A stretch of DNA of 64,000 nucleotides from Octopus bimaculoides (lineage: Eukaryota). Shown piece by piece: positions 753 to 55,566 of the stretch. The stretch's first letter is position 1. Each line of letters starts with the position of its first letter. The notes under the pieces are model-generated. The model was not told where the DNA came from. It searched no databases and saw only the letters and a list, made by a program, of their open reading frames with translations. The stretch is taken from positions 33,005,979 to 33,069,978 of the forward strand of contig NC_069001.1 in assembly GCF_001194135.2 (NCBI RefSeq), written 5' to 3'. The position numbers and the translations under genes are program-made.

Positions 753-959
753 TCAGTAATGTTTTCCAAGATAACAGATAACTGTTTTATTGTGTAATAT
801 TGTATGTTTAAGGAGGAGACTTGTATCGTTACAATCTTGTGTACATGTGCAGAAGACATGTAGAGATGGGTATACACAAACACGCATATATGTGCGTGTG
901 TGTGTTGTGCGTGTGAATATATGTTCTTGTGCATGCATGTGTAAATGTGTGTGTGTGTA

Positions 960-4721: not shown

Positions 4722-4872
4722 CATGAAACTTGGTCATGTGGAGTTGAATTACACTATATATATATATCTATATATNNNNNNNNNNNNNNNNNNNNNNNNN
4801 NNNNNNNNNNNNNNNNNNNNNNNNNNNNNNNNNNNNNNNNNNNNNNNNNNNNNNNNNNNNNNNNNNNNNNNN

Positions 4873-5953: not shown

Positions 5954-6540
5954 AGTGTTCACAGAGAATTGAGTAGCAGTCTTGATGTTGGTATTTTGAA
6001 TCATCATGATATAGGTAAATGTTTTCCAATATGCAGATGGCTCCCGTCTTCCGTGTTAGCTAACATTTTTTCAACTACAACTTTAATCTTTATGCTTTCC
6101 AATGCAATTGACTGTTCTCCAATATGTCAAGCTGTTCCTGGAAAAAGAAGACATAAAAAATTGTCAAATTTAACCCAAACACCCTTTATATACGTTATTC
6201 CTATGTAAGAGCACAACTTTTGGTGCAAATCTGATGAAATGCCATTCTGATATATAAAACTGCAAATTTTATACAACTTTTCACTTGGAACTTTTGCATG
6301 CAATGACATTAAAAACAAGGTGGCACTGAGGCAATTGTGACTGGTCATTAAAGATATGCTTAAATTTATTCTTTGTCTTCTTATTTGGATTACATATTCA
6401 TATGTATGTATGTATATATATATATCCACACACACACACACACACACAGACGTATGTAATATATATATATATGTATGTACTATGTACTTATGTATGTGTG
6501 TGTATGTATATATGTATGTATATTCGTATATATATATATG

Positions 6541-6589
6541 GTCCAACCCATGCCAGCATGGAAGGCGGACGTTAAACGATGATGATGAT
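6541..6589 (+). mobile_element. RTE-type 3' terminus (...ggacgttaaacgatgatgatgat)
   Basis: Near-exact reverse complement of the 42519-42570 tail. Confidence 0.75.
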
Positions 6590-7304
6590 CTATATCTGTA
6601 TATGTATAAATATTTATATGTATATGTTTGCGCGCGCGCGCGCGGTTGTGCCTGCCTGCGTGTTCAATTACGTGTGTATCTTCATATCTGTGCGCTTGAT
6701 TATACACTTCATGCATATGTGTTTAATTGGTGTGTACGCACGCGCGTACGTGCGTGCGTGCGTGTATATATGTTAGAGCGATGCTGGTGATTCTTAGTAC
6801 ATGTATAGCTTATATTTTTCCTTCCTTCTCCTCGAAGCCCGCATGCAAGCATAATTTGTATATTCCTTCCAAAACTTCTCTGAGCACACTACCGCGAGGA
6901 AATGTATTTATTTTTTAAATGTTATAAATCTGTTTATTATTTATAATTAATGCAATTTAATGTTCAACTTGTGTATAGAGTTTTAAGCATAGTTTGTTTC
7001 CTATTCTGGAATCTGAGGAATAATCTGAAAGAAAGACAAGAAAAGCTAAACGCATTCATCCAACCACACTCACACAAACTTATCATAGATACACAGATTT
7101 AGGAAAAGAAAGGTATATTTATCTCACCAACACCACTTACTACCGCTTCTCTGTTGTATAATTTTGTAAATGAAACTAGTTAATTTTTGTATTCGAGTAT
7201 TATTTACCTTATAGGTATATTCTTTTAAAGAAAAATACCAGTTAGATTATTTATTTTATTTATAACAATTTCACTTCTTTATTCATTTTGTTTTATCTTG
7301 TCTG

Positions 7305-7320
7305 ATGACGTCATGGGCGG
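7305..7320 (+). promoter_or_regulatory. Candidate proximal promoter: CRE palindrome ATGACGTCAT abutting GC box GGGCGG
   Basis: Perfect 10-bp palindrome (7305-7314) containing TGACGTCA, followed directly by GGGCGG (7315-7320), about 125 bp upstream of the exon-1 ATG in otherwise very AT-rich DNA. Confidence 0.5.
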
Positions 7321-7442
7321 GGGTGATTGTGAGATTTTGGACCAAAAGTGAGGAACTCTTTGGAAATTATCAACAATAACAGAAACAACTCCGAAGTTGT
7401 TTGTTTCAAAGGCCTAATAGGAAGTAACGTTGTCGGTCTGTT

Positions 7443-7518
7443 ATGAAGAACACAAAAGAAATGTCACTGCTGAAAGATTTAGAAAAAGTATTGAAAACTA
7501 TGGGTAAAAAGTACCCTG
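7443..7518 (+). CDS. Elk: Putative coding exon 1 of KCNH/Elk-like K+ channel (MKNTKEMSLLKDLEKVLKTMGKKYP + 1 nt)
   Basis: First ATG after an in-frame TAA (7425-7427); 25 codons + 1 nt then a strong donor G|GTAAGT. 76 nt with a phase-1 intron is the KCNH exon-1 architecture (hERG exon 1 = c.1-76). Splices in frame to the 43792 exon (...KKYP-G-NFVLGNA). Sequence is divergent from the canonical PAS-cap. Confidence 0.65.
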
Positions 7519-9730
7519 GTAAGTGCAGTTATATATATATTTTTTGTATGCTTATTTTCTTGTTTTTCAGTATAATTTAAGAGTAGTATATATAGCTGAA
7601 ACCGAGGAGCATGTTTTTTGTTTGTTTGTTATTTTTTCTATCCCTCGTTTGCGTTCTGAGTTCGAATTTGGCGGGGACAGAATCAATGAAATAAATAGCA
7701 ATACTAAGATCTTTTGACACTTGGCTTCTGCTTCCAAAACAATCAATAATTACTACAATTTATTACCAGGTTGGTGAAGACAGCTGAAGGGAATATATAA
7801 AGCTGACTCAATGTGTGACTGTATTTAGATTATTTCTTATACATGCTCAGTTTATTTCTTATACATGTTCAGTTTATGTCAGTAATATGTTGCAGTCGAT
7901 GCGGTCAACAGTTCTCCATATACTATATAAGTTAACTCTACCTTGTAAGAAAAAAAAAATGAAAACAGTAAATATTTGTTTGCAACGTTGTGTGCAGTTT
8001 GATTCCACGAAACACCTGTCTCTTGAAATATGTTTTTTTCTTTTTCATTATTTCCTTAAAGAAAAATAAAAGCTACCCACCATGTCGTCTATTTATGTGA
8101 TACTCTGTTTAATGCTACTCCGTCAAGTCAATATATTTACTGTGTGGTATCCTTACTTTTAAATTATCTTTTATACTTTTTCTCCAGCTAATGTTTTTCT
8201 TTTTCTTTTTTTTTCTTCGAATCATTGGGATCAATAAAGTCGATGTTTATCATTTTCTGTTGTCATTTCGATTCAGTTCAGTCTTGAATAGATCTATGTT
8301 CAAAGGTATTCCGGTCGGGGCTATCACGCACATCTTTTAGTTTTCTTGACAGTATATTTAAGACCAAATATTCTAGCGGGCCGAGTGATCACTTAACGGC
8401 CTCCTCGTTGACTCTGTTTATTATTGTTAGTTCCTGCATTAAACCGACGAGTGACCGGCGCTGGTCTTTTTCTGATAGTTTTTTTCTCTCTCTTTTGTCT
8501 CCAAAAGAATTGAACAGTGAGCAATTGTTGCTGTTTACACTGTTGAATTATGCGACCCACGTTACCTAGCTAAGTGAACTCAACCGTTAAGAGTTGTCTT
8601 GATTACAGATACATGCATTGCCAATGACCAGCTACAAATCACCGATTTGCTCAGCAGCCAAATAACTCGTAAATCTGTGGCAGTCCCTTTATTTCAATAT
8701 TGATTTTTTACATTGACACAAGACAACATATTTTCGGGGAGGGTATAATCGATAAAACCAACCCCCAATATTTCATTGTTATTATATTTCATCGACCGTA
8801 GACGGATGAAGGGCAAAGTTCACCCATGTAGAATTTCAGCCCAGAAAGCAATGTACCGGAACAAAATTCCGAAAGCCATCATGTCAAGGCTCTATTAATT
8901 TTGCTAATTGCTCACACTATTTTTAATTCTAATATTATCGTAAATGATAGAAGTGAAGTATCGGTGGAGAGCCGGACAAAATACCGTGTAGCATTTATTT
9001 ACGCCTCCTTACGTCCTATATTCAAGCCCTGCTGAGGTCGACGCTTACTTTCACCCCTCCAGGATCGATAAAATAAGTACTAGCATAGTGCAGGGTGTCG
9101 TCATAATTGTCTCTGCTCTCTTCTTAGGCTTGCAGCAGTGTTACAAATCAATGTTACTTCTATTTGTTTATTGATATGCAGGCTTTAGTGCCTGGGTGTG
9201 CTTCAGAATATTCTGGGTTGGCATTAATTTGTAATAATGCTAAAGTGGAGTAAATCTGAGGGTGCATCATTGAATGGTGAGGAGACAGAGCCGTCCAGTG
9301 CAACCCCTTAACGACGGGCATCTTGATATGGCAACCCTAACACTAGGGGTGTTCTTGGACACTTTCAATGGCTCCACTGAGTTAACACATGCCGTTTGTT
9401 TACATTCTATTCCTTGCTAGCCAATTTCCGACTACCTTAGAAGCAACTGAATCTTTAAATATGATACAGTTTATAAAATATGTTCACGTGTAATGAACAT
9501 ATTCATGAATCTCTCACTCTACCTCGTACATATTCATTCAGTTGCTGGCTACAGCCCATTCTGATTTCCTGGTTGTTGCTATTTCACTTCACCTAGGCCG
9601 CTAATGTTCCTGGGACAGACTACAGCATCCTACCTTTCAGCTCCCCTTTAACCACTCAGCATAATCACGCAGGGAAAAAGGAATAGTTCATACTGGAATT
9701 ACAAACATTAGATTTAATTTTTATGCCAGC

Positions 9731-10343: not shown

Positions 10344-10474
10344 TGCATGATGCTGTTTAATGTTCAGCTGTCGGATTTCAAAATGTCTGTCGGTTGTGAC
10401 GTAAATAATCAACTGGGGAACAATGCGCCTTTAGTGACTGTAATTCAGTGATAGTAATCTGAAAGATTAGAGAT

Positions 10475-15470: not shown

Positions 15471-16815
15471 GTGCTCAGCAGTTCATGCTATGTAAGTGCA
15501 AATCCCAGCGCTTTATATACAGATGCCGTGTCATGTCTTCTTAGAAAAACGAAGGTGAGCGAGAAACTAATCACAAAGGAAGGAAACATTTTGAAGCTGA
15601 CACCGCCGGAAGAGCTATCGGCCAACGTGACAAAAAGAACAGTTATTTTCAAAACCATGATGGCAGCCACGAGAAAGGTAGAAATAGCACCAATAGAGGC
15701 CATAGAAGAATGTGTTAAGCAATTAAAAAGATTCACTACTTATATTACGAGAGGAAGAAGATACGCCACTGTGGAGGTGCGCTTCACAACGATGGAGGAA
15801 ACAATAAAGCACTCTACAGAAGCAATAAGGACAGACGAATGGGTGCTGTTGCCTTCGCACTGCGGCAAACGTGTGGCCAAGGTGTGAGTGGGTAAGGTGC
15901 CACCCGAATTAAATGAAGAATGGCTGATGACAGCCATAATATATAATATGAAAGAAGGGAATATACTGAAGGCTACAAGGACCGAGAAGGTAGATTAGTG
16001 GGGATATGGGATCGAACTAACGATTCAGGCAACAACAGAGGATTTGAACAGTGTGGTGGAGGAGATTGTGCTACCAGAAGATGTGAGACTGAGAGTTACT
16101 GTGGAGGGTAGGCCGCCAGTGTGTTTCACATGTGGAGAAAGGGGCCACATGAAGGGATGGTGCGCCCAAAGAAAGCCACAAACAGAACAGGAGGAGAGAC
16201 AGGAGAGTGTGGACCAGGTAGTACAGAACAGGGCAACAGAAACAGGAAGCGGAGAAGGGATTCACAATGGTTAAGAAGAAAAGGAGGAGGAGCGGAGGAA
16301 TGAGTTCTCCGCCTGAGAAGCAGAAAAAGAAGAGAGACGAGGTGAGAAAGGAAGCTATGAAGGAGGGCAGTAGGAAGGAGAAAGAAAGTAAAAAGAAGGT
16401 GGAGTTACCAGTGGGGAAGGAGTCGGAAACCCAATTGTATGAAGGTGAGATGGAGAAACTATTTATGGAGGAAGAAAAGAGAACCAAAAGTCCAAGAGAG
16501 AGGAAAGAAGATACGATGAAGAAAAGGAACCCTAACCCTAATCCCTTCAAAAGAAATCGCGCTCTCTGTATCTCTTTCGCTTTTACGACGTCGTTTCCCT
16601 CTTTCCCTCCAACACTTTTTACGGAAAAGGCCGATCTTTGGTAAAGATCGCCGAAGACTGGTGCTGCATGGGAGTGGGGCCCATGCATCCATTTTCATTT
16701 TTTCATAACTTTCATTTCATTTACATTCGTTTTATGTTTTGTGTCCCCACTGTGGTCTTGTTTGTCCTTGTGGTGTACCCATCTATGTTTAGAGCTTTAT
16801 GCCTAATAAAGAAAT
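15471..16815 (+). mobile_element. L1/Tx1-type ORF1 (gag-like, CCHC knuckle) pseudo-ORF joined to a 3' UTR
   Basis: One frame from 15471 to about 16270, broken only by TGA (15885) and TAG (15996), carrying VEGRPPVCFTCGERGHMKGWC (CX2CX4HX4C). Followed by a frameshifted K/E/R-rich tail, a T-rich UTR and aataaagaaat. Confidence 0.8.
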
Positions 16816-22544: not shown

Positions 22545-22940
22545 TCTATTCTTTTATTTGTTTCAGTCGTTTGGCTGCGGCCATACTGGAGCACCACCTT
22601 TAGTTGAACAAATCAACTCCAGGACTTATTCTTTGTAAGCCTAGTACTTATTCTGTCAATCTTTTTTGCCGAACTGCTATGTTATGGGGACATAAACACC
22701 CCAACATCGGTTGTGAAGTGATGGTGGGGGGACAAACAGACACACAAACAAACACATACGCATACACACACACACATACACATATATATGACGGGCTTCT
22801 CAGTTTCCATCTCCCAAATCCACTCACAAGGCTTTGGTCAGCCCGAGGCTATAGTAGAAGACACTTGCCCAAGGTGCCACGTAGTGGTGCTGAACCTGGA
22901 ACCATGTGGTTGGTAAGCAAGCTACTTACCACACAGCCAC
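22545..22940 (-). mobile_element. Full-length SINE family A (head+core+tail)
   Basis: tttcagtc...ggccatactggagcacc...ctttgtaagcctagtactta...cactcacaaggctttggt...accacacagcc. Confidence 0.9.
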
Positions 22941-23339
22941 TTCAGTCATTTGACTGTAGCCATGCTGGAGCATTGCTTTAAAGGGTTTTTTAGTCAAAGA
23001 AATCGACCCCAGGATTTATTCTTTGTGAGCCTAGTACTTATTCTGTCAGTCTCTTTTACTGAGCCACTTAGTTATGGGGACATAAACACACCAAGCATCA
23101 GTTGTCAAATGATGGCTGGGCGACAAACGGATACACACACACATAAATATATATGTACATATATATATATATATTCATATATATGATGGACTTTCCATCT
23201 ACCAAATCCACTCACAAGGCTTTGGTTGGCCCAAAGCTATAGTAGAAGACACTTACCCAAGGTACCATACAGTAGGACTGAACCCAGAACCATGTGGTTG
23301 GGAAGCAAGCTTCTTACCATACAGCCATGCCTGCACCTA
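22941..23339 (-). mobile_element. Second full-length SINE family A, directly tandem to the first
   Basis: Same module order repeated immediately after 22940. Confidence 0.9.
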
Positions 23340-32141: not shown

Positions 32142-34559
32142 TTTATTATTTATCTATGTTTGAACATAAAAGCATCATCCTCAACTGAATTCTCCTGAAC
32201 ATGCCAACAAACAACAGCTGTAATGTTTACATATCTATAGATTATATCATTTTAGACTTTTCAAGAAAAAAATAAAAGAAAAAAGTCACTGAAGACTGTG
32301 AGCCATGAGCAGCATAGCTCAACGAGAGTATATTGCCATTCTGAGTTTGAAACCTATTTTCAGTTCTTGGCTGGATCCATTATATTCTGTGATTCGTGCT
32401 GTAGATTATATTTATAGGGAGGATGGGTTCCACTTGATGTTGACATTCTAAAAATACTTTCATCTGCATTTCATATCATGGAACATCAACACATGGTTAT
32501 TTTGCTTTATTTTCCTGTATGAGATTGAAATTTTTAGTGAATCCCAATGATGCACTCGGGATGGAAGCAGGAATTATTAAATATTGTGATTTTAGTGTGG
32601 CACAAGTTTCAGATATTTAGAAAGATAATGCATTGCAAATCTTTCCAAATGCTGCATCATACAAATATAAATTGTTGTGTTTTGTGGCTGATGCTGGTTG
32701 ACATTCAATGAGGCTGCAATAGTTACAAAGATACTTGTTTGGTGAGCAGATGTGGTTGTCTTTTGTCAGTTAAGTTTCTTCAGAGCACATCTCTTTGGAT
32801 GTGCAGTCCTCAGTCAAGAGAAGTCTAAGATTGGGTACCTGACATCTTGAATATTTCCAGGTGCTCACAGTTCTCAATCGGTTGGGCAATGGTAGTTAGT
32901 GAAACCTGCATGTAAGCATTCTATAAAGAACTATTAATGAATAAGAACAATATTGTTCTTGGGTAAACTTTAGGCACTGATAAGAACTGACTGGCTGTAA
33001 CAGTTTCAAATATGTAAATTTAATTGTATGTTAGAATACAAAGAAACTTCCTTCAGAGAAAGAGGATAATGACTTGTCAACTAAATTACAACAGGTATAT
33101 AGTCCATTTTTTATATTATAGTGCATTGTTGTACCGTTCAAAATCTTCTATTCTTTACAAACAATACACAATACTTCAAGCGAACTACAATACTCTCCTT
33201 TAAATTATTGTAAATGTATGTGGTCAGTAATGATTTCCAAAATATCTGTGTGTGTGTGTTTACCTATACATATATATCTATCTTTTGTATCTCTCTTTTA
33301 TAATTGGGAAGTATCAGGAATTTCACCTATTTCTGAAGATTCATGCTAAGTTTATATGATATACAATAACAGCTATAAACCTTCAGAAAATCTGAGATGA
33401 ATCTTGAGAATATGATTATGTCATATGTTGATAAGATTAATAGTTTTGCAGTGTTATTTTTAGACTTGGCACAAGTCCAGTAGTTTCAGAAGGTTGCAGT
33501 TAATCACAGTAAAAACAAAACCAAAAGCAAACAAAAAAAATATCTATAGTTGATATGAACTATATAATACATATCTAAACTATGTCACTAGTAACAGGAA
33601 TAGAAAACATACTTTAATGGAAGAGGATAAAACATTTATAAAGATTGAAACAATACAATTGAAACAAAAAAGTAATGAAAATCCTATTTAATCTCAGTGT
33701 TGGATGTTAAAATGACCAATTAGATAAATTTTAGTTAATTGGTTTACAAAATTTTACTCAAGCCCATAAAGGAAGTCTTATGTGGTTACTTGACCTGCTA
33801 GAAATAGCTGCGAGACTACCTCAAATTCCATCTTACAACACATGCACGCACGCTCTCACACACACACAAAGAAAATTTTAACCAAAGTAATCTCTGGTTT
33901 ATATGAAATAAGATTGCCCAGGCCAAAATGCTTTTGGTCATAGACTGGTCAGCTAGTCATTGGGAGGATAGGGGTATATGTGTAGAAGGTGTGTCCATTT
34001 TCTCAGGTAACCTAGGAGAAGGATAGTGGAGAGAGAGGGAGCAAAATATCAGAAGGGCCAGAATGGGTGACTGGGTGGAAGAAGCAAAGGGATATTAGGG
34101 TGTAGAGTTGGTTGAGCAGTGATTGACGAGTTATCTGCAGTCGGTCATTGCAACTATGGCTGTTCATGGCTTTGGCATAACTTGATAAACTTTCTCCATA
34201 CTGGTTGTTTTTTTTTTGTTTTTTGCTTGGGTTTGCCATTTATTACAGTCAAGTGCTGAATAAATGTAAGAGTAGGTAATAAGATAAAGGTAAGAATAGG
34301 TGTTGAATAACAATAAAAGTGACCCACAGGAACAAGTGCTGGCTGATAGTACAACAGAGCTTCTTCTGCTTTACAACCAGCCAGCACTCTCAATCACAGT
34401 ATATTGTGTGTGTATACGGTAGGGATGAAGGTGGTCCAAAGAAGTCTCTTATATATGGTCATGTATGCATATATATATCTTCCATAATGTGAGGGTGATA
34501 CCAATGCTTTTTTCAGATTATAACATAGATTATAACAGATTATAACTAACAAATCCAAT

Positions 34560-36668: not shown

Positions 36669-36809
36669 GCTCACAAGATTAAAAACCTCTTCAACTGAGT
36701 GAGACTACAGTAGAGGAAGGTGGCTTTATACTTAGAGATGAGTGGATGCGTTCTGAGATAAGGAACAGAACAGGTTTCTTGCTATTGAAGAGCTACACAG
36801 CTACTCATG

Positions 36810-37300
36810 TTTGTCGAGGAGTGGGTGAGTCAAACTGGAAAGAGAGATAAAAACAATGGTGATGAAGTTTTAGGTTAGGCCTTGAAAGTGCAAGAAGGTG
36901 AACAGAGCTGAGTGGTGACAGAAAAACAGGGACTGGAGGTGGTATAAAGGTTGCAAGAATATATGAGCTGAGTAAAGAATGGTCAGAGATGGGACATGGA
37001 TGAAAGTACAGATATAATGAAGAACAAGATTTGAGGAGTGGCTGGTGATAAATAGACAGAGGGAAAACAGGTAAGAGTAGGTGATGACTGTAGAGATTAG
37101 GTAGGATTGTAGGGTGAAAATAGTAAAAGGGTAGGGGGATGGTAATGATACATATGAGATGGGAAGGTAGGAGAGAATAGGTGATGACTGATAATACAGA
37201 AGGAGTTAGGAGTAGCAGAATAGTAATAATACAAGAGGTAGGGGAAGTATGAGAGATAGGGAGATGATGTGTTGGTGTTTGGGGAGGAGAGTTAATTTGG
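36810..37300 (-). mobile_element. Pyrimidine-rich repeat family copy (reads purine-rich on +)
   Basis: Reverse complement shares catctccctat(t/c)tctcata and ccatctct(a/g)accat with 1330-1580. Confidence 0.55.
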
Positions 37301-38990: not shown

Positions 38991-39399
38991 CACCATAAAA
39001 GTTGTTTAAATGGGAAGTGAGAATATAATTAATGTGCAAACATTTTGCAGAGATGTAAAAGAGATAATAAAAGATAACAAGAAGTTGGAGTATCTTTCTT
39101 ACTGTTTGCTGCCCCATGAAATTAAAAGTATTTATCTTGCCAAAAGTAAAGCTCTTTTTGCTTCGCAAGAATGTAAATTTTTTCCTAGAAAATGAAATTA
39201 CAAAGGAACAACAAACATTATTTAACAGTGATAATAAAGAAAATAGTGGACAGCAGAACACCAGTTGGATAATATATGCATCCAGTGGGATGAAAGCATA
39301 TTAATTGCTGTGAAGCTGTGTAAGATAAAGAAATAAATTAAGCAATGTGAGACACATGTAAGAGACAGTATCTCCTAGTAAGAGCTGACTCAGACTGTG

Positions 39400-39566
39400 A
39401 CAACCTGTCTAGTTCAGGTAGTGATTCAGCGATAAGAGCAAGGTCATCAGCATAGAGGAGCTCCCAGGGGCAGCCTGTCTTGAATTCCTCTGTTATTGCC
39501 TAGAGGACTATGATGAACAAGAAAGGGTTGGGGACTGATCCTTGGTGAACCCCTACTTGTACCCTG
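39400..39566 (-). mobile_element. RTE LINE RT core fragment
   Basis: VQVGVHQGSVPNPFLFIIVL*AITEEFKTGCPWELLYADDLALIAES (QG and YADD motifs). Confidence 0.9.
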
Positions 39567-40153
39567 TCTTAAACTGCAATAAGTAGTTGTAAAAAAAATA
39601 TATTTTTATCTTTTTAATCTGCTAGATATTGATCTTCTTCACTAAATTTTTTTTATAATGGTGGGATAACTTGAAGAGGTCAAAACATCTGTCTGGTTGG
39701 ACATTATTGGTTGGCATAATTATTTAGTAGTATCAATGCCATAGATAACACAGCATCCCCAAGTATCTGGTGGACTAATTTCTGTTTTTCATCCTTTGGC
39801 TTATTTTCTTCTCTTTAGTAAATTCAATAGGTGTTATCTGATATGAGATCAACCTAAGTAGGCTAGAACTGGAGTATTTATGGATTATAGTTACATTTAA
39901 ATGTTGGAAAATAAGCCTTACACTTAAGCCTAGCAGATCAATTTTGTGTGAAGTTGGTTTTTAACTTAACTGACACAAGTTTCTTCTTTATATGAATAAG
40001 TTTCAATTGGTGAAATTATATATTTTTGAAAATTAAATTGATACTAATTCTTACAAAGTTTTCTGTTCTTTCGTTTTTTTTTTGACAGTTTTGAAAGTAA
40101 AGGATGGGATTTAGCTAATTGAAATAAGCTAATAATATTACTGATACATTTAA

Positions 40154-42830: not shown

Positions 42831-42990
42831 GTATGGCTGTGTGGTTAAATGGTTCACATCCAAACCACATGGTTTCAGGTTCAGTCTCACTGTACAGCAC
42901 TTTGGGTAAGTGTTTTCTCTTATAGCCCTAGATTGACCAAAGCCTTGTAAATAAATTTGGTTGACAAAAACTGAAAATTTGTCATGTGTG
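42831..42990 (+). mobile_element. SINE family A head/core
   Basis: tggctgtgtggtt...ggttcagtctcactg...gaccaaagccttgt...aactgaaa. Confidence 0.8.
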
Positions 42991-43791: not shown

Positions 43792-44019
43792 GTAACTTTG
43801 TACTTGGAAATGCAAAGTCCGATGGCCTACCAGTTGTGTACTGCTCAGAAGGATTCTTTGAGATTACTGGCTTCCGACGAAGCCAAGTAATTGGCAAGCG
43901 GTGTAGTTGCAGTTTCCTCTATGGAGCCCTTACAAAAGAGGAATCAAAGCAAAAGGTTGAAGATGCTCTTATCTATCAACAGGAAACGAAAGTCAATATC
44001 TGCCTTTATACCAAATATG
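43792..44019 (+). CDS. Elk: KCNH/Elk-like K+ channel exon 2, PAS (eag) domain N-part: (G)NFVLGNAKSDGLPVVYCSEGFFEITGFRRSQVIGKRCSCSFLYGALTKEESKQKVEDALIYQQETKVNICLYTKY
   Basis: Long polypyrimidine tract + CAG acceptor (43789-43791), donor G|GTAAGT at 44020; 228 nt, phase 1-1, open frame. Motifs NFVLGNA, PVVYCSxGF and CSCxFLYG match KCNH PAS domains. Confidence 0.93.
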
Positions 44020-44239: not shown

Positions 44240-44602
44240 TCTACTTGTTTCAGTCACTAGACTGCAGCCATGCTGGGGCACTACCTTGGAGAATTTTTAG
44301 TCAAATGAAACGACTTCAGGATTTATTTTTTTTCAAGTCTAGTCCTTATTCTGTTGGTTACTTATGCTGAAATGCTAAATTTCAGGGAATTTAAACACAC
44401 CAACACCGGTTGTCAAGTGGTGGTCGGGGACAAACGCAGACACAAAAGCACACACACACGCACACACATATAGACACATACATACGATGGGCTTCTTTCA
44501 GTTTCCATCTCCGAAATCCACTCACAAGGCTTTGGTTGACCCAAGTCTATAGTAGAAGATACTTGCCCAAGGTGCCACACAGTGGGACTGAACCTGGAAC
44601 CA
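44240..44602 (-). mobile_element. SINE family A, near full length
   Basis: Same modules as 22545-22940. Confidence 0.88.
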
Positions 44603-44620
44603 AGCAAGTAGTATTGCTGA

Positions 44621-44654
<34 letters not shown>

Positions 44655-45643
44655 TTTTTGTCAGAAGGTCGCAGATCATGAAATACTTGAAAGCTATCTG
44701 TCTGTCTGTCTGTCTGTCTATGGTATGGCTGTGTGATTAAGAAGTTCACTTTGAAGCCCAGTAGACAAATAAACCCTTTTTAAATTAATGATTCAGCATG
44801 AAAATGAAAATAATCTATCAAAGACAATTTCGTTTTTTGAGCAGGTATGTGTAAAACAAATTTAATCTGCCTGTATATTTGTACATCATAATGCAGGAAA
44901 CCTCTATAGATTAAACAGAATCTGTACTTTATTGATTAATCAAATGCCATATTACTTCATCAAAGGCCTTTCGATAGAATGTAGCACACCCAACGAATGA
45001 TTAAAGAAGATCAGAATTGATAGCAATGACTTTCAACTAATCACTCTCCTGAACTTGGGACAAAAGATAGACATCAGCATTTTACAAGAATATACTCTAT
45101 TTATAAATGTGAAAAGAAAAGTTAACTACAGCTCCTTACTGTGTACCGTCTTCTTACCTTGTCAATAAGTATTTCAAATACATGTTTAAAGAGATAATGT
45201 AAAAATGATTCTCATAAATGTGGGTGGAAGGTCTACATTCATACCCCACTGTCACCACCAACACAAAAAAAAAAAATGTTAATTACCATGCAGTCACACC
45301 TGCATCTATTTGTCTAGTGAAAAAAAAACCCAAACAAAAAACAAAAATAAGAAATGTTTTTTATTGTTAATTATTCCTGTCTTTGCTGTAAATCAATTTG
45401 GAGATTATTTGGTGTGTTACATAATTTTTCAAATAAATTGTTTGATTTTTTACTTACAAAATTCATGGCTCACTACATGTAGTATGTTAGTGTACACTTT
45501 TGTGTTTTTCATGCAGAAGATGTCCCTGGGTAACTTTTCATCCTCATTCTTTTGACAAATATTAGCATTGTTATTCATGGAAGTATACGACTTCTCCTAA
45601 TTCTCACTTTACAGTGATAAAATATTATAACCTGTCTTTTCAG

Positions 45644-45769
45644 GAAATCCATTTTGGTGTCAGGTGGAAATCATTCCAATCACAAATGAAAACCAAGAAG
45701 TAGTTCTTTTCTTAGTATCTTTTTACCAGAACATGCCAAATGACCAAAATATAGAATCCGAAATCACAG
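45644..45769 (+). CDS. Elk: KCNH/Elk-like exon 3, PAC part of PAS: (G)NPFWCQVEIIPITNENQEVVLFLVSFYQNMPNDQNIESEIT
   Basis: CTGTCTTTTCAG acceptor, CAG|GTATTT donor, 126 nt, phase 1-1, in frame with exon 2; matches the KCNH G.PFWC...I.PI.NE...VVLFL.SF motif. Confidence 0.92.
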
Positions 45770-53949: not shown

Positions 53950-54086
53950 AACACGATCCTGATATCTTATCAAGTCCAACAAATGAATCACATTTCCAAA
54001 AACGAAAACGGAGAGGAAGACAAGTACTCTTTAATCTTTCAAAACAGTTTAAGTCCAGTAGGAAAAAGATGTCCCAGTTAGACAAG
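53950..54086 (+). CDS. Elk: KCNH/Elk-like exon 4, post-PAS linker: (E)HDPDILSSPTNESHFQKRKRRGRQVLFNLSKQFKSSRKKMSQLDK
   Basis: TTTACTTTTTGCAG acceptor, AAG|GTCAGC donor, 137 nt, open in the phase-1 frame expected from exon 3. RKRRGRQVLFNLS resembles the Elk linker motif RRRSRAVLYxLS (recalled). Confidence 0.8.
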
Positions 54087-54600: not shown

Positions 54601-55010
54601 TTCTATCTTTTACTTGTTTCAGTCATTAGACTGAAGGCAGTGCTCCAGCCATGCTGGAGCACTGCCTTGAACATTTTTTCAGTTGGACAAACTGACCCAG
54701 TACTTATTATGTTTTTGTAAAGCCTGGCATTTATTCTATCAGTCTCTTTTGCCAAACTGCTAAATTATGGGGATGTAAACACAACGGCACCAGTTGTCAA
54801 GGGGTACTGGGGGACAGACACAAACACTACCCCCCCCCCCCACACAAACATACAATAGTCTTCTTTCAGTTTCTGTCTATCAAATCCATTCACAAAGCTT
54901 TGATCGGCCCGAGGCTATAGTAGAAGACACTTGCCCAAGGTGCCATGCAGTGGGACTGAACATAGAACCATGTGGTTGGAAAGCAAACTTCTTACCACAC
55001 AGTGAAGCCT
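54601..55010 (-). mobile_element. SINE family A, full length
   Basis: Same modules as 22545-22940. Confidence 0.88.
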
Positions 55011-55566
55011 GTACCTGTATATACTCACATATAAATATACCACCACCATCTTCAACAGGATTCATGCCTCAATTATAAATATCCAGAATCACAATTATCT
55101 CCCTGTAGATTTAAATTTAAATACAGGTGGATAACTTATCATTAAAATAATACATAAAACTCTTGCTTTATGCAAGAAAGTAAAATAATAAGCTTATTGT
55201 ATACAGCACTCAGGTATACTACAACTCATCAAAAAGGTTTAAAAGAATAGACAGAAAACACGTATACAAGGAAGAAATGACAGCAACGAAAGCTAGAAGT
55301 ATATACACACTGGCTAGAATAAATAGACAGAAAAGTGAACATTAAAGGCGTCATAAAGAGAAACGCTTTTTAGCAAGTTTCAGTAAATAGAATTAACACA
55401 TAAATCATATGTAAAGTAACATATATTTGTGTGGAATTAAATTGTTTTGGCATATTTAAGCATGTGCTAAATGAATGATGCTGTTATATTAGATCATTTT
55501 AAATTTCAGTATATTTGAAAAAGTAAGGAAACGTCATTCCCACGTGTTCTCACAGCACCAGACTTT

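What the first reader, a model, noticed from the sequence alone, without database searches (positions are those of the whole stretch)
7443..7518. Elk-like channel with a replaced PAS-cap: canonical exon geometry, non-canonical N-terminus
Seen: a 76-nt phase-1 first exon splices in frame to a clear KCNH PAS exon, but encodes MKNTKEMSLLKDLEKVLKTMGKKYP. Known: KCNH channels start with a conserved MPVxxGxxAPQNTFL N-tail plus amphipathic helix that docks on the CNBHD and gating machinery and sets deactivation and voltage-dependent potentiation. Here only an amphipathic-looking helix (LLKDLEKVLKTM) remains, and the PAS end (SFYQN for SFKDI) is also divergent. Inference: a lineage-specific, fast-evolving KCNH paralog with altered gating.
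Basis: partly seen in the sequence, partly recalled or inferred. Interest (0 to 1): 0.7.

Follow-up and report, generated by a model that had tools for sequence, protein, structure and literature searches.

The report
Alternative first exon of octopod Elk channel
The odd 25-residue start is very probably a real exon, conserved in a second octopod, but it is an alternative first exon lying downstream of a normal one, so the potassium channel likely has two N-terminal versions rather than a replaced one.

Summary
Window 7443-7518 is a 76-nt ORF that starts with ATG and ends in phase 1 before GTAAGT. It is in frame with a clear KCNH PAS exon at 43792.

Geometry alone proves nothing: the 43.8 kb upstream of exon 2 holds 1247 ATG/phase-1/GT candidates, and two others have similar length and strong donors.

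The deciding evidence is conservation. The only close relative found, an Argonauta hians gene, has the same exon inside its intron 1 (MPNSKKGDTSLSRDLEKLLKSMGKRYP). ATG, GTAAGT donor and phase are kept, there is an in-frame 6-nt indel, changes fall mainly on third codon positions, and the flanks do not align. It lies 35.6 kb upstream of exon 2 there, against 36.3 kb here.

The Argonauta gene model also has a canonical cap exon (MPVRKGRTVAGNRFLDTIINRVEGS) 22.6 kb further upstream. Collinear anchors place the window start about 17 kb downstream of that exon, so the window simply does not reach it.

The best reading is therefore an alternative first exon, probably with its own promoter. It swaps the flexible N-tail plus short helix for one long amphipathic helix on an Elk-type eag domain. 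"Replaced PAS-cap" is not supported; "divergent Elk-like paralog" is. No transcript evidence was obtainable.

The parts
7443..7518 (+). Exon 1b, an alternative first coding exon of 76 nt. It encodes MKNTKEMSLLKDLEKVLKTMGKKYP plus the first base of a Gly codon (phase 1).
   Evidence: ORF and donor are. The ortholog is at L001:32667-32748 in Argonauta, with ATG, GTAAGT donor and phase kept and a 6-nt in-frame indel. Codon-position differences are 4/7/15 with 9 synonymous-only codons; binomial p=0.009. Shuffle z is about 14. It is single copy in the window.
7519..7524 (+). Splice donor GTAAGT of exon 1b.
   Evidence: The hexamer is identical in Argonauta.
7425..7427 (+). In-frame TAA five codons upstream of the ATG. 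The ORF cannot extend further 5'.
   Evidence: Argonauta has an in-frame TAA seven codons upstream.
7306..7322 (+). TGACGTCA (CRE-like) followed one base later by GGGCGGGG (GC box), 121-137 nt upstream of the ATG. These are putative promoter elements for exon 1b.
   Evidence: This is the only GGGCGGGG in 64 kb (expected 0.02) and one of two TGACGTCA (expected 0.36). The motifs are only consensus matches and are not clearly conserved in Argonauta.
43792..44019 (+). Exon 2, the first half of the PAS domain (NFVLGNAK...LYTKY). It enters and leaves in phase 1.
   Evidence: It has the same 228-nt length as in Argonauta.
45644..45769 (+). Exon 3, the second half of the PAS domain (NPFWCQVEIIPITNENQEVVLFLVSFYQN...).
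   Evidence: It is 126 nt in both species.
53950..54086 (+). Exon 4, the start of the N-linker (EHDPD...FQKRKRRGRQVLFNLSKQFKSSRKKMSQLDK).
   Evidence: It is 137 nt in both species.
757..816 (+). Unique conserved non-coding block upstream of exon 1b, used as a collinearity anchor.
   Evidence: It is 83% identical to L001:27513-27572 and single copy in both sequences. It lies 6.6 kb upstream of 1b here and 5.1 kb upstream in Argonauta.
10384..10441 (+). Second single-hit conserved non-coding block, downstream of exon 1b, used as a collinearity anchor. Copy number was not checked separately.
   Evidence: It is 85% identical to L001:39144-39202, and that was its only hit in the locus.

Best explanation
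Window 7443-7518 is exon 1b, a conserved alternative first coding exon of an octopod Elk-type (KCNH3/4/8-like) potassium-channel gene. It lies in the long intron between a canonical PAS-cap exon (1a, expected upstream of the window) and the first PAS exon.

Transcription from an internal promoter just upstream would splice 1b to exon 2 in the same phase as 1a. The product would be a subunit with an intact PAS domain but a different cap. The canonical cap has a flexible basic N-tail (about 12 residues) and a 10-residue amphipathic helix. The 1b cap is one long, strongly amphipathic, lysine-rich helix (about residues 4-23) followed by GKKYPG.

In ERG, EAG and ELK channels the N-tail and cap helix set deactivation, Cole-Moore behaviour and voltage-dependent potentiation. 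They do so through contacts with the CNBHD, the C-linker and the voltage sensor. The 1b isoform is therefore expected to gate differently, most likely with faster deactivation and weaker potentiation. It may also tune currents by co-assembling with 1a subunits, as hERG1a/1b do.

Shown: the exon, its conservation as coding sequence, its phase compatibility, the coexistence of 1a and 1b in Argonauta, and the Elk-type PAS domain. Inferred: use of the 1b-2 junction, the promoter, presence of 1a in this species, and all gating effects.
For: Exon anatomy is.

Conservation in Argonauta intron 1:
- The match is at a collinear place, 35.6 kb from exon 2 against 36.3 kb in the window.
- ATG, donor hexamer and phase are kept despite a 6-nt indel.
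- Codon-position differences are 4/7/15 (binomial p=0.009).
- Flanks are only 32-42% identical ungapped.
- The match scores 35.8 bits against a shuffle maximum of 23.1.

A six-frame scan finds only 1b and exons 2-4 as unique collinear coding-like matches.

The canonical exon 1a is present in the Argonauta gene model. Non-coding anchors place the window start about 17 kb downstream of it.

The PAS domain is Elk-type. The channel body (Ion_trans + cNMP_binding) lies directly downstream in Argonauta.

The amphipathic moment is 0.74-0.79 in both species, p<=0.003. AlphaFold2 predicts helix 4-23 for 1b, against coil 1-12 plus helix 13-22 for 1a.

A CRE and a GC box lie 121-137 nt upstream.

Cap function is reviewed in PMC7515569. 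Multiple tissue-specific isoforms of a KCNH gene are described for C. elegans unc-103 (PMC8968053).
Against: - No transcript evidence. No protein in 5.8 billion or 1.8 billion representatives carries the 1b peptide joined to the PAS domain, and no contig with the read-through ORF is on record.
- Only two species could be compared.
- Exon 1a was not seen in this species, because it would lie outside the window or conceivably in a gap.
- The Argonauta 1a-2 junction comes from a gene model of unknown evidence.
- The promoter motifs are not clearly conserved.
- The AlphaFold2 placement of the helix may be biased, because the alignment put 1b opposite canonical caps.
Confidence: 0.68

Rival explanations
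1. Replaced cap. In this species the canonical exon 1a has been lost and 1b is the only first exon, so every channel from this gene carries the non-canonical cap.
For: No canonical cap exon is detectable anywhere in the 43.8 kb upstream of exon 2. Exon 1b is intact and conserved.
Against: The ortholog keeps an intact 1a 22.6 kb upstream of 1b, whereas the window holds only 7.4 kb upstream of 1b. Collinear anchors map the window start to about L001:27 kb, well downstream of 1a at 10 kb. Absence from the window is therefore expected whether or not 1a exists.
Confidence: 0.12
2. Conserved, but not a KCNH exon. The block is the first exon of a separate nested transcript, or a small ORF, that does not splice to exon 2.
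For: No junction evidence exists. Short conserved ORFs inside long introns do occur.
Against: Phase 1 matches the exon 2 acceptor in both species, and it is preserved across a 6-nt indel. Conservation stops exactly at a consensus donor. No other unique conserved coding-like block lies between 1b and exon 2 to serve as a partner exon.
Confidence: 0.12
3. Chance ORF plus donor in a long AT-rich intron, or a conserved non-coding or repeat element that happens to be open.
For: There are 1247 candidates of this geometry and two others of similar length with strong donors. The lysine-rich peptide is typical of AT-rich translation.
Against: The block is single copy in both loci and scores z of about 14 over shuffles. 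Substitutions show three-base periodicity with 9 purely synonymous codons. ATG, the upstream in-frame stop, the donor and the phase are all conserved while the flanks are random.
Confidence: 0.05

Closest known systems
hERG1a / hERG1b (KCNH2; mouse Merg1a/1b) alternative first exons
   Same: One KCNH gene has two promoters and two first exons, giving subunits with different N-termini that can co-assemble and set deactivation kinetics (PMC7515569).
   Different: hERG1b drops the whole eag domain (cap plus PAS) and replaces it with a short unique peptide. Here only the 25-residue cap is exchanged and the PAS domain is kept. The subfamily is also different (Elk rather than Erg).
C. elegans unc-103 (ERG-like) isoforms
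   Same: This invertebrate KCNH gene has many tissue-specific isoforms (ten are quoted in PMC8968053, citing Reiner et al. 2006).
   Different: I recall, but did not verify here, that these isoforms differ in their first exons and come from separate promoters. I also could not verify which residues those exons replace. There is no sequence similarity to exon 1b, and the phylum and subfamily differ.
Canonical KCNH PAS-cap (MPxxKGLxAPQNTFLDTIxxxFxG)
   Same: The exon position, phase and almost the same length (25 codons + 1) match. Both end in an amphipathic helix followed by Gly just before N-F-(V/I/L)-L. AlphaFold2/Foldseek align 119 columns to the Drosophila ELK eag domain 4HP4, against 104-106 columns for structures that hold only the PAS core.
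   Different: There is no significant sequence similarity (p 0.05-0.8). The R/K-G...APQN tail is absent. The helix is predicted to start at about residue 4 rather than 13.
Drosophila ELK / vertebrate KCNH3, KCNH4, KCNH8 eag domains
   Same: These are the best sequence and fold matches for exons 2-3.
   Different: Identity is only 46-47%. The PAS end is SFYQN instead of SHKDI/SFKDI. In Argonauta even the canonical cap is divergent (AGNRF for APQNTF).

Membership tests
KCNH (EAG-family) voltage-gated K+ channels | N-terminal PAS (eag) domain. | tested here: met
   Pfam PAS_9 at 2.2e-15. PDB KCNH eag domains at 9e-36 to 3e-20. Foldseek top hits are KCNH PAS structures, with TM-score to target 0.83-0.91.
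KCNH (EAG-family) voltage-gated K+ channels | Six-TM voltage-gated pore module followed by C-linker and CNBHD in the same gene. | tested here: inconclusive
   These are not in the window: no exon downstream of 54086 was found. In the Argonauta ortholog an 845-aa model with Ion_trans + cNMP_binding starts 5.3 kb downstream on the same strand. The link is by adjacency, not by a transcript.
Elk subfamily (KCNH3/4/8) | Groups with Elk rather than Eag or Erg. | tested here: inconclusive
   The PAS domain is closest to Drosophila ELK (9e-36, against 2e-24 for ERG and 2e-22 for EAG). The nearest named proteins are KCNH8-like. No phylogeny of the whole channel was made.
Canonical PAS-cap | MPxx(K/R)G..APQNTFLDTI motif encoded by the first exon. 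| tested here: not met
   Exon 1b shows no significant similarity to five canonical caps. No library protein aligns to query residues 1-24 in a cap context. The motif is met by exon 1a of the Argonauta ortholog, not by anything in the window.
Alternative first exon / alternative promoter isoform | Own start codon and a donor in the same phase as the other first exon. | tested here: met
   ATG, an upstream in-frame stop and a phase-1 GTAAGT donor are present in both species. Exon 1a in Argonauta also ends in phase 1 before GTAAGT.
Alternative first exon / alternative promoter isoform | Coexists with another first exon in the same gene. | tested here: inconclusive
   This is met in Argonauta, where 1a is at L001:10001-10076 and 1b at 32667-32748. 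It cannot be tested in the window, which ends 7.4 kb upstream of 1b.
Alternative first exon / alternative promoter isoform | Transcripts that start at or near the exon and join it to the common exon. | not testable with these tools
   No RNA data are available. No matching protein or contig was found in the collections. CRE and GC-box motifs upstream are only a hint.

The most novel reading that the evidence does not exclude
Octopods make, from an internal promoter conserved between two lineages whose introns no longer align, an Elk-channel isoform in which only the PAS-cap is swapped. The flexible N-tail plus short helix gives way to a long basic amphipathic helix, while the PAS domain stays. 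This would be a natural cap-swap that retunes deactivation and voltage-dependent potentiation, possibly cell-type specifically and through 1a/1b heteromers.
Probability: 0.45. Interest if true: 0.6.

Novelty: new variant of a known kind. Interest (0 to 1): 0.48.

Why it matters
The PAS-cap is the part of KCNH channels that reaches the gating machinery, and almost all knowledge of it comes from deletions and point mutants of mammalian ERG, EAG and ELK channels. A naturally selected second cap on an otherwise identical channel would be an evolutionary experiment on what the N-tail does. It would also be a ready-made pair of constructs for electrophysiology. The known N-terminal isoforms (hERG1b, KCNH2-3.1, Merg1a') remove part or all of the PAS domain rather than exchanging the cap alone. 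For annotation, it shows that the first exon of these genes lies tens of kilobases upstream and is easily missed or mis-called, as several database models suggest. A non-canonical start seen in a truncated window should therefore not be read as loss of the canonical one.

Tried and rejected
- Canonical cap exon in the window. tblastn with human ERG/EAG/ELK sequences written from memory, and with the Argonauta cap, found nothing above noise.
- Geometry as evidence. The count of equivalent candidates shows it is not significant on its own.
- CpG-island test for a promoter. The CpG-rich patches are simple repeats or transposon fragments, and 7401-7700 has an observed/expected ratio of only 0.97. 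This was not used as evidence.
- Bacterial-type promoter and terminator scan. It is not relevant to a eukaryote and showed nothing above shuffles for promoters.
- Origin of 1b by duplication of 1a. MAFFT lines up VLKTMGKKYPG with FLDTIATRFDG, but local alignment scores are not significant (p 0.05-0.8). This is left open.
- Transcript or other-species evidence. The word-indexed search found only the Argonauta protein. The exhaustive search found no protein matching residues 1-24. The exact look-up of the read-through ORF found nothing. A search with the Haliotis KCNH8-like eag domain returned no cephalopod protein, so I could not test whether octopods also keep a conventional Elk gene.
- Exon 5 and the channel body. 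tblastn with three Elk channels found neither in the window nor in the 4.7 kb of the Argonauta downstream model that was fetched.
- Literature. No paper on cephalopod Eag/Erg/Elk channels or on a cap-only alternative exon was found.

Full report
**1. What is in the sequence**

Window 7443-7518 (+) is ATGAAGAAC...TACCCTG followed by GTAAGT. That is 25 codons, MKNTKEMSLLKDLEKVLKTMGKKYP, plus one base. An in-frame TAA lies five codons upstream, so the reading frame opens at this ATG. Position -3 is a purine.

At 43792, after a long pyrimidine tract and CAG, a second exon continues the split Gly codon and reads NFVLGNAKSDGLPVVYCSEGFFEITGF.... Using the one close relative found, I fixed the downstream exons:
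- exon 2: 43792-44019
- exon 3: 45644-45769
- exon 4: 53950-54086

Together with 7443-7518 they make 567 nt, or 189 codons. The peptide matches Pfam PAS_9 at 2e-15.

**2. Is the geometry more than chance?**

No. In the 43.8 kb upstream of exon 2 there are 1247 ATG-initiated open stretches that end in phase 1 before GT. Five distinct ones have GTRAGT donors. Two of those (36746-36824, 79 nt; 42833-42905, 73 nt) are as "canonical" in length as the candidate. The lysine-rich peptide is also what AT-rich DNA tends to encode.

**3. The relative**

A word-indexed search of 5.8 billion proteins returned one hit: a 205-residue Argonauta hians protein, 83% identical over exons 2-4. The window is therefore cephalopod, probably octopod. 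I infer this from that single hit.

That protein begins MPVRKGRTVAGNRFLDTIINRVEGS|GNFVLGNAK, a recognisable if divergent PAS-cap. I fetched its locus, L001, which is 85 kb. The cap exon (1a) is at L001:10001-10076 and ends in phase 1 before GTAAGT. It lies 58.3 kb upstream of exon 2. An 845-residue model with Ion_trans and cNMP_binding domains starts 5.3 kb downstream of exon 4 on the same strand. The annotation has evidently split one KCNH gene in two.

**4. The decisive result**

tblastn of the candidate peptide against the Argonauta locus gives a single strong hit inside intron 1, at L001:32667-32750: MPNSKKGDTSLSRDLEKLLKSMGKRYPG. The DNA there shows the following features:
- an ATG with a purine at -3;
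- an in-frame stop seven codons upstream;
- 27 codons plus one base;
- the identical GTAAGT donor.

Relative to the window there is one 6-nt in-frame indel, so phase 1 is kept.

Of the 25 aligned codons, 9 differ only synonymously. Differences by codon position are 4, 7 and 15. The excess at third positions has binomial p = 0.009. Sixty bases on either side are 32-42% identical ungapped, which is random for this composition.

Three hundred shuffles of the peptide gave best hits of 17.8 +/- 1.3 bits (maximum 23.1), against 35.8 bits for the real peptide. The other strong-donor candidates gave only noise. The block is single copy in both loci.

Its distance to exon 2 is 35.6 kb in Argonauta and 36.3 kb in the window. 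For comparison, exons 2-4 differ at 13%, 8% and 47% of codon positions 1, 2 and 3 and are 83% identical in protein. Exon 1b differs at 16%, 28% and 60% and is 64% identical. So it is less constrained than the PAS core but clearly not neutral.

A six-frame comparison of the whole window with the locus found only this block and exons 2-4 as unique, collinear, coding-like matches. Everything else was repeats, simple sequence or transposon fragments. There is thus no visible partner exon for a separate nested gene.

**5. Where the canonical cap is**

In Argonauta, exon 1a lies 22.6 kb upstream of 1b, whereas the window contains only 7.4 kb upstream of 1b.

Two short non-coding blocks each gave a single hit in the locus and are collinear:
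- window 757-816 = L001:27513-27572, 83% identical, confirmed single copy in both sequences;
- window 10384-10441 = L001:39144-39202, 85% identical.

They bracket 1b in the same order in both species. This puts the window start at about L001:27 kb, some 17 kb downstream of 1a. Introns 2 and 3 are 1.1 and 1.6 times longer here than in Argonauta.

Failure to find a canonical cap in the window is therefore the expected result and says nothing about loss. The 97-nt gap at 4776-4872 sits in a microsatellite.

**6. What kind of channel**

The best solved relative of the PAS domain is the Drosophila ELK eag domain 4HP4, at 9e-36. That compares with 2e-24 for hERG and 2e-22 for EAG1.

An AlphaFold2 model has mean pLDDT 79.7, with decade means of 77-94 over residues 31-130. 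Its best Foldseek match is also 4HP4.

An exhaustive search of 1.8 billion representatives found the nearest non-cephalopod relatives at 46-47% identity. Those I looked up are named KCNH8-like, from Haliotis, Hermetia and Cherax.

"Elk-like" is supported, although no whole-channel phylogeny was made. The divergent PAS end (SFYQN here, SFYLN in Argonauta, SHKDI/SFKDI elsewhere) is real and shared.

**7. What the alternative cap looks like**

No protein in the exhaustive search aligns to residues 1-24. Similarity of 1b to five canonical caps is not significant (p 0.05-0.8), so common origin with 1a is neither shown nor excluded.

Both species' 1b peptides contain a strongly amphipathic 11-mer, SL(L/S)(K/R)DLEK(V/L)LK. 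Its hydrophobic moment is 0.74-0.79, with p <= 0.003 against shuffles, and both peptides carry net charge +4.

With the same set of aligned relatives, AlphaFold2 predicts:
- the canonical Argonauta cap: coil 1-12 plus helix 13-22;
- the 1b cap: one helix from residue 4 to 23, with pLDDT of 47, 71 and 79 for the first three decades.

Foldseek aligns 119 columns to 4HP4, against 104-106 columns for structures that hold only the PAS core. This suggests the 1b helix is modelled where the canonical cap helix sits. The alignment placed 1b opposite canonical caps, so this placement may be biased and I treat it as inference.

**8. Promoter hints**

The only GGGCGGGG in the 64 kb (expected 0.02) lies at 7315-7322. 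It sits one base after one of two TGACGTCA sites (expected 0.36) and 121-137 nt upstream of the ATG. Argonauta has only a loose resemblance about 190 nt upstream of its ATG. This is suggestive and no more.

**9. Mechanism proposed**

The gene has two first exons. Exon 1a gives the usual cap. Exon 1b, read from an internal promoter, gives a subunit with the same PAS domain but without the flexible N-tail, carrying instead a longer basic amphipathic helix.

The review PMC7515569 summarises what the cap does:
- it points toward S4, the S4-S5 linker and the C-linker;
- it controls deactivation in hERG;
- it controls voltage-dependent potentiation and intrinsic-ligand dynamics in ELK;
- deleting it in hERG mimics deletion of the whole PAS domain for deactivation.

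By analogy the 1b isoform should deactivate faster and potentiate less, and could tune native currents as hERG1a/1b heteromers do. None of this was tested.

**10. Comparison with what is known**

Alternative N-terminal isoforms are established in the family. hERG1a/1b is covered in PMC7515569, and ten tissue-specific unc-103 isoforms are described in PMC8968053, citing Reiner et al. 2006.

What differs here is that only the cap is exchanged and the PAS domain is retained. The replacement is itself conserved between two lineages whose introns no longer align. I found no paper describing this, though the searchable library is incomplete.

Several database models of KCNH3/4/8 also carry unrelated N-termini in front of the first PAS exon. 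That shows how often this distant first exon is mis-called, or perhaps alternatively used.

**11. Limits**

- There is no RNA evidence.
- Only two species could be compared.
- The Argonauta 1a-2 junction is a gene model of unknown support.
- Exon 1a was not seen in this species.
- The channel body lies outside the window.

**12. Verdict**

However, this is an additional first exon, not a replaced one. It is a new variant of a known kind, of moderate interest.

Noticed in passing
window 7306-7322: TGACGTCA is followed one base later by the only GGGCGGGG in the window, 121-137 nt upstream of the exon 1b ATG. This is a promoter-like pair of motifs.
   Followed up: partly
window 757-816 and 10384-10441: Two short non-coding blocks, 83-85% identical to single places in the Argonauta intron (L001:27513-27572 and 39144-39202), lie collinear on either side of exon 1b. 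They may be regulatory elements.
   Followed up: partly
window 15471-16644 (+) and 39341-39568 (-): Transposon remains lie in intron 1. One set of ORFs has a CCHC zinc knuckle (CFTCGERGHMKGWC). There is also a reverse-transcriptase fragment, which matches an RT fragment at a roughly collinear place in the Argonauta intron (L001:61522-61746).
   Followed up: no
L001:10001-75420 and 80699-85420: The Argonauta annotation splits the channel gene. One 205-aa model reads through the exon 4 donor into the intron (ending ...VGYFYRAKCGPIWLNW). A separate 845-aa model carries Ion_trans and cNMP_binding domains.
   Followed up: partly
proteins P0007, P0011, P0013, P0023, P0032, P0039: Several database KCNH3/4/8 models from fish, a pangolin and an unidentified source carry unrelated N-termini directly in front of (D/N)SNF(V/I/L)L(G/A)NAQ. 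They are either mis-called first exons or further alternative first exons at the same phase-1 junction.
   Followed up: no
window 22787-22880, 23184-23271, 44379-44736, 54779-55078 and others: A short interspersed repeat family is present in many copies in both the window and the Argonauta locus.
   Followed up: no
window 6400-6780, 4776-4872: The highest CpG observed/expected patch (1.95) is a (GC)n / (ACGTGCGTG)n simple repeat, not a CpG island. The 97-nt assembly gap sits inside a microsatellite.
   Followed up: yes
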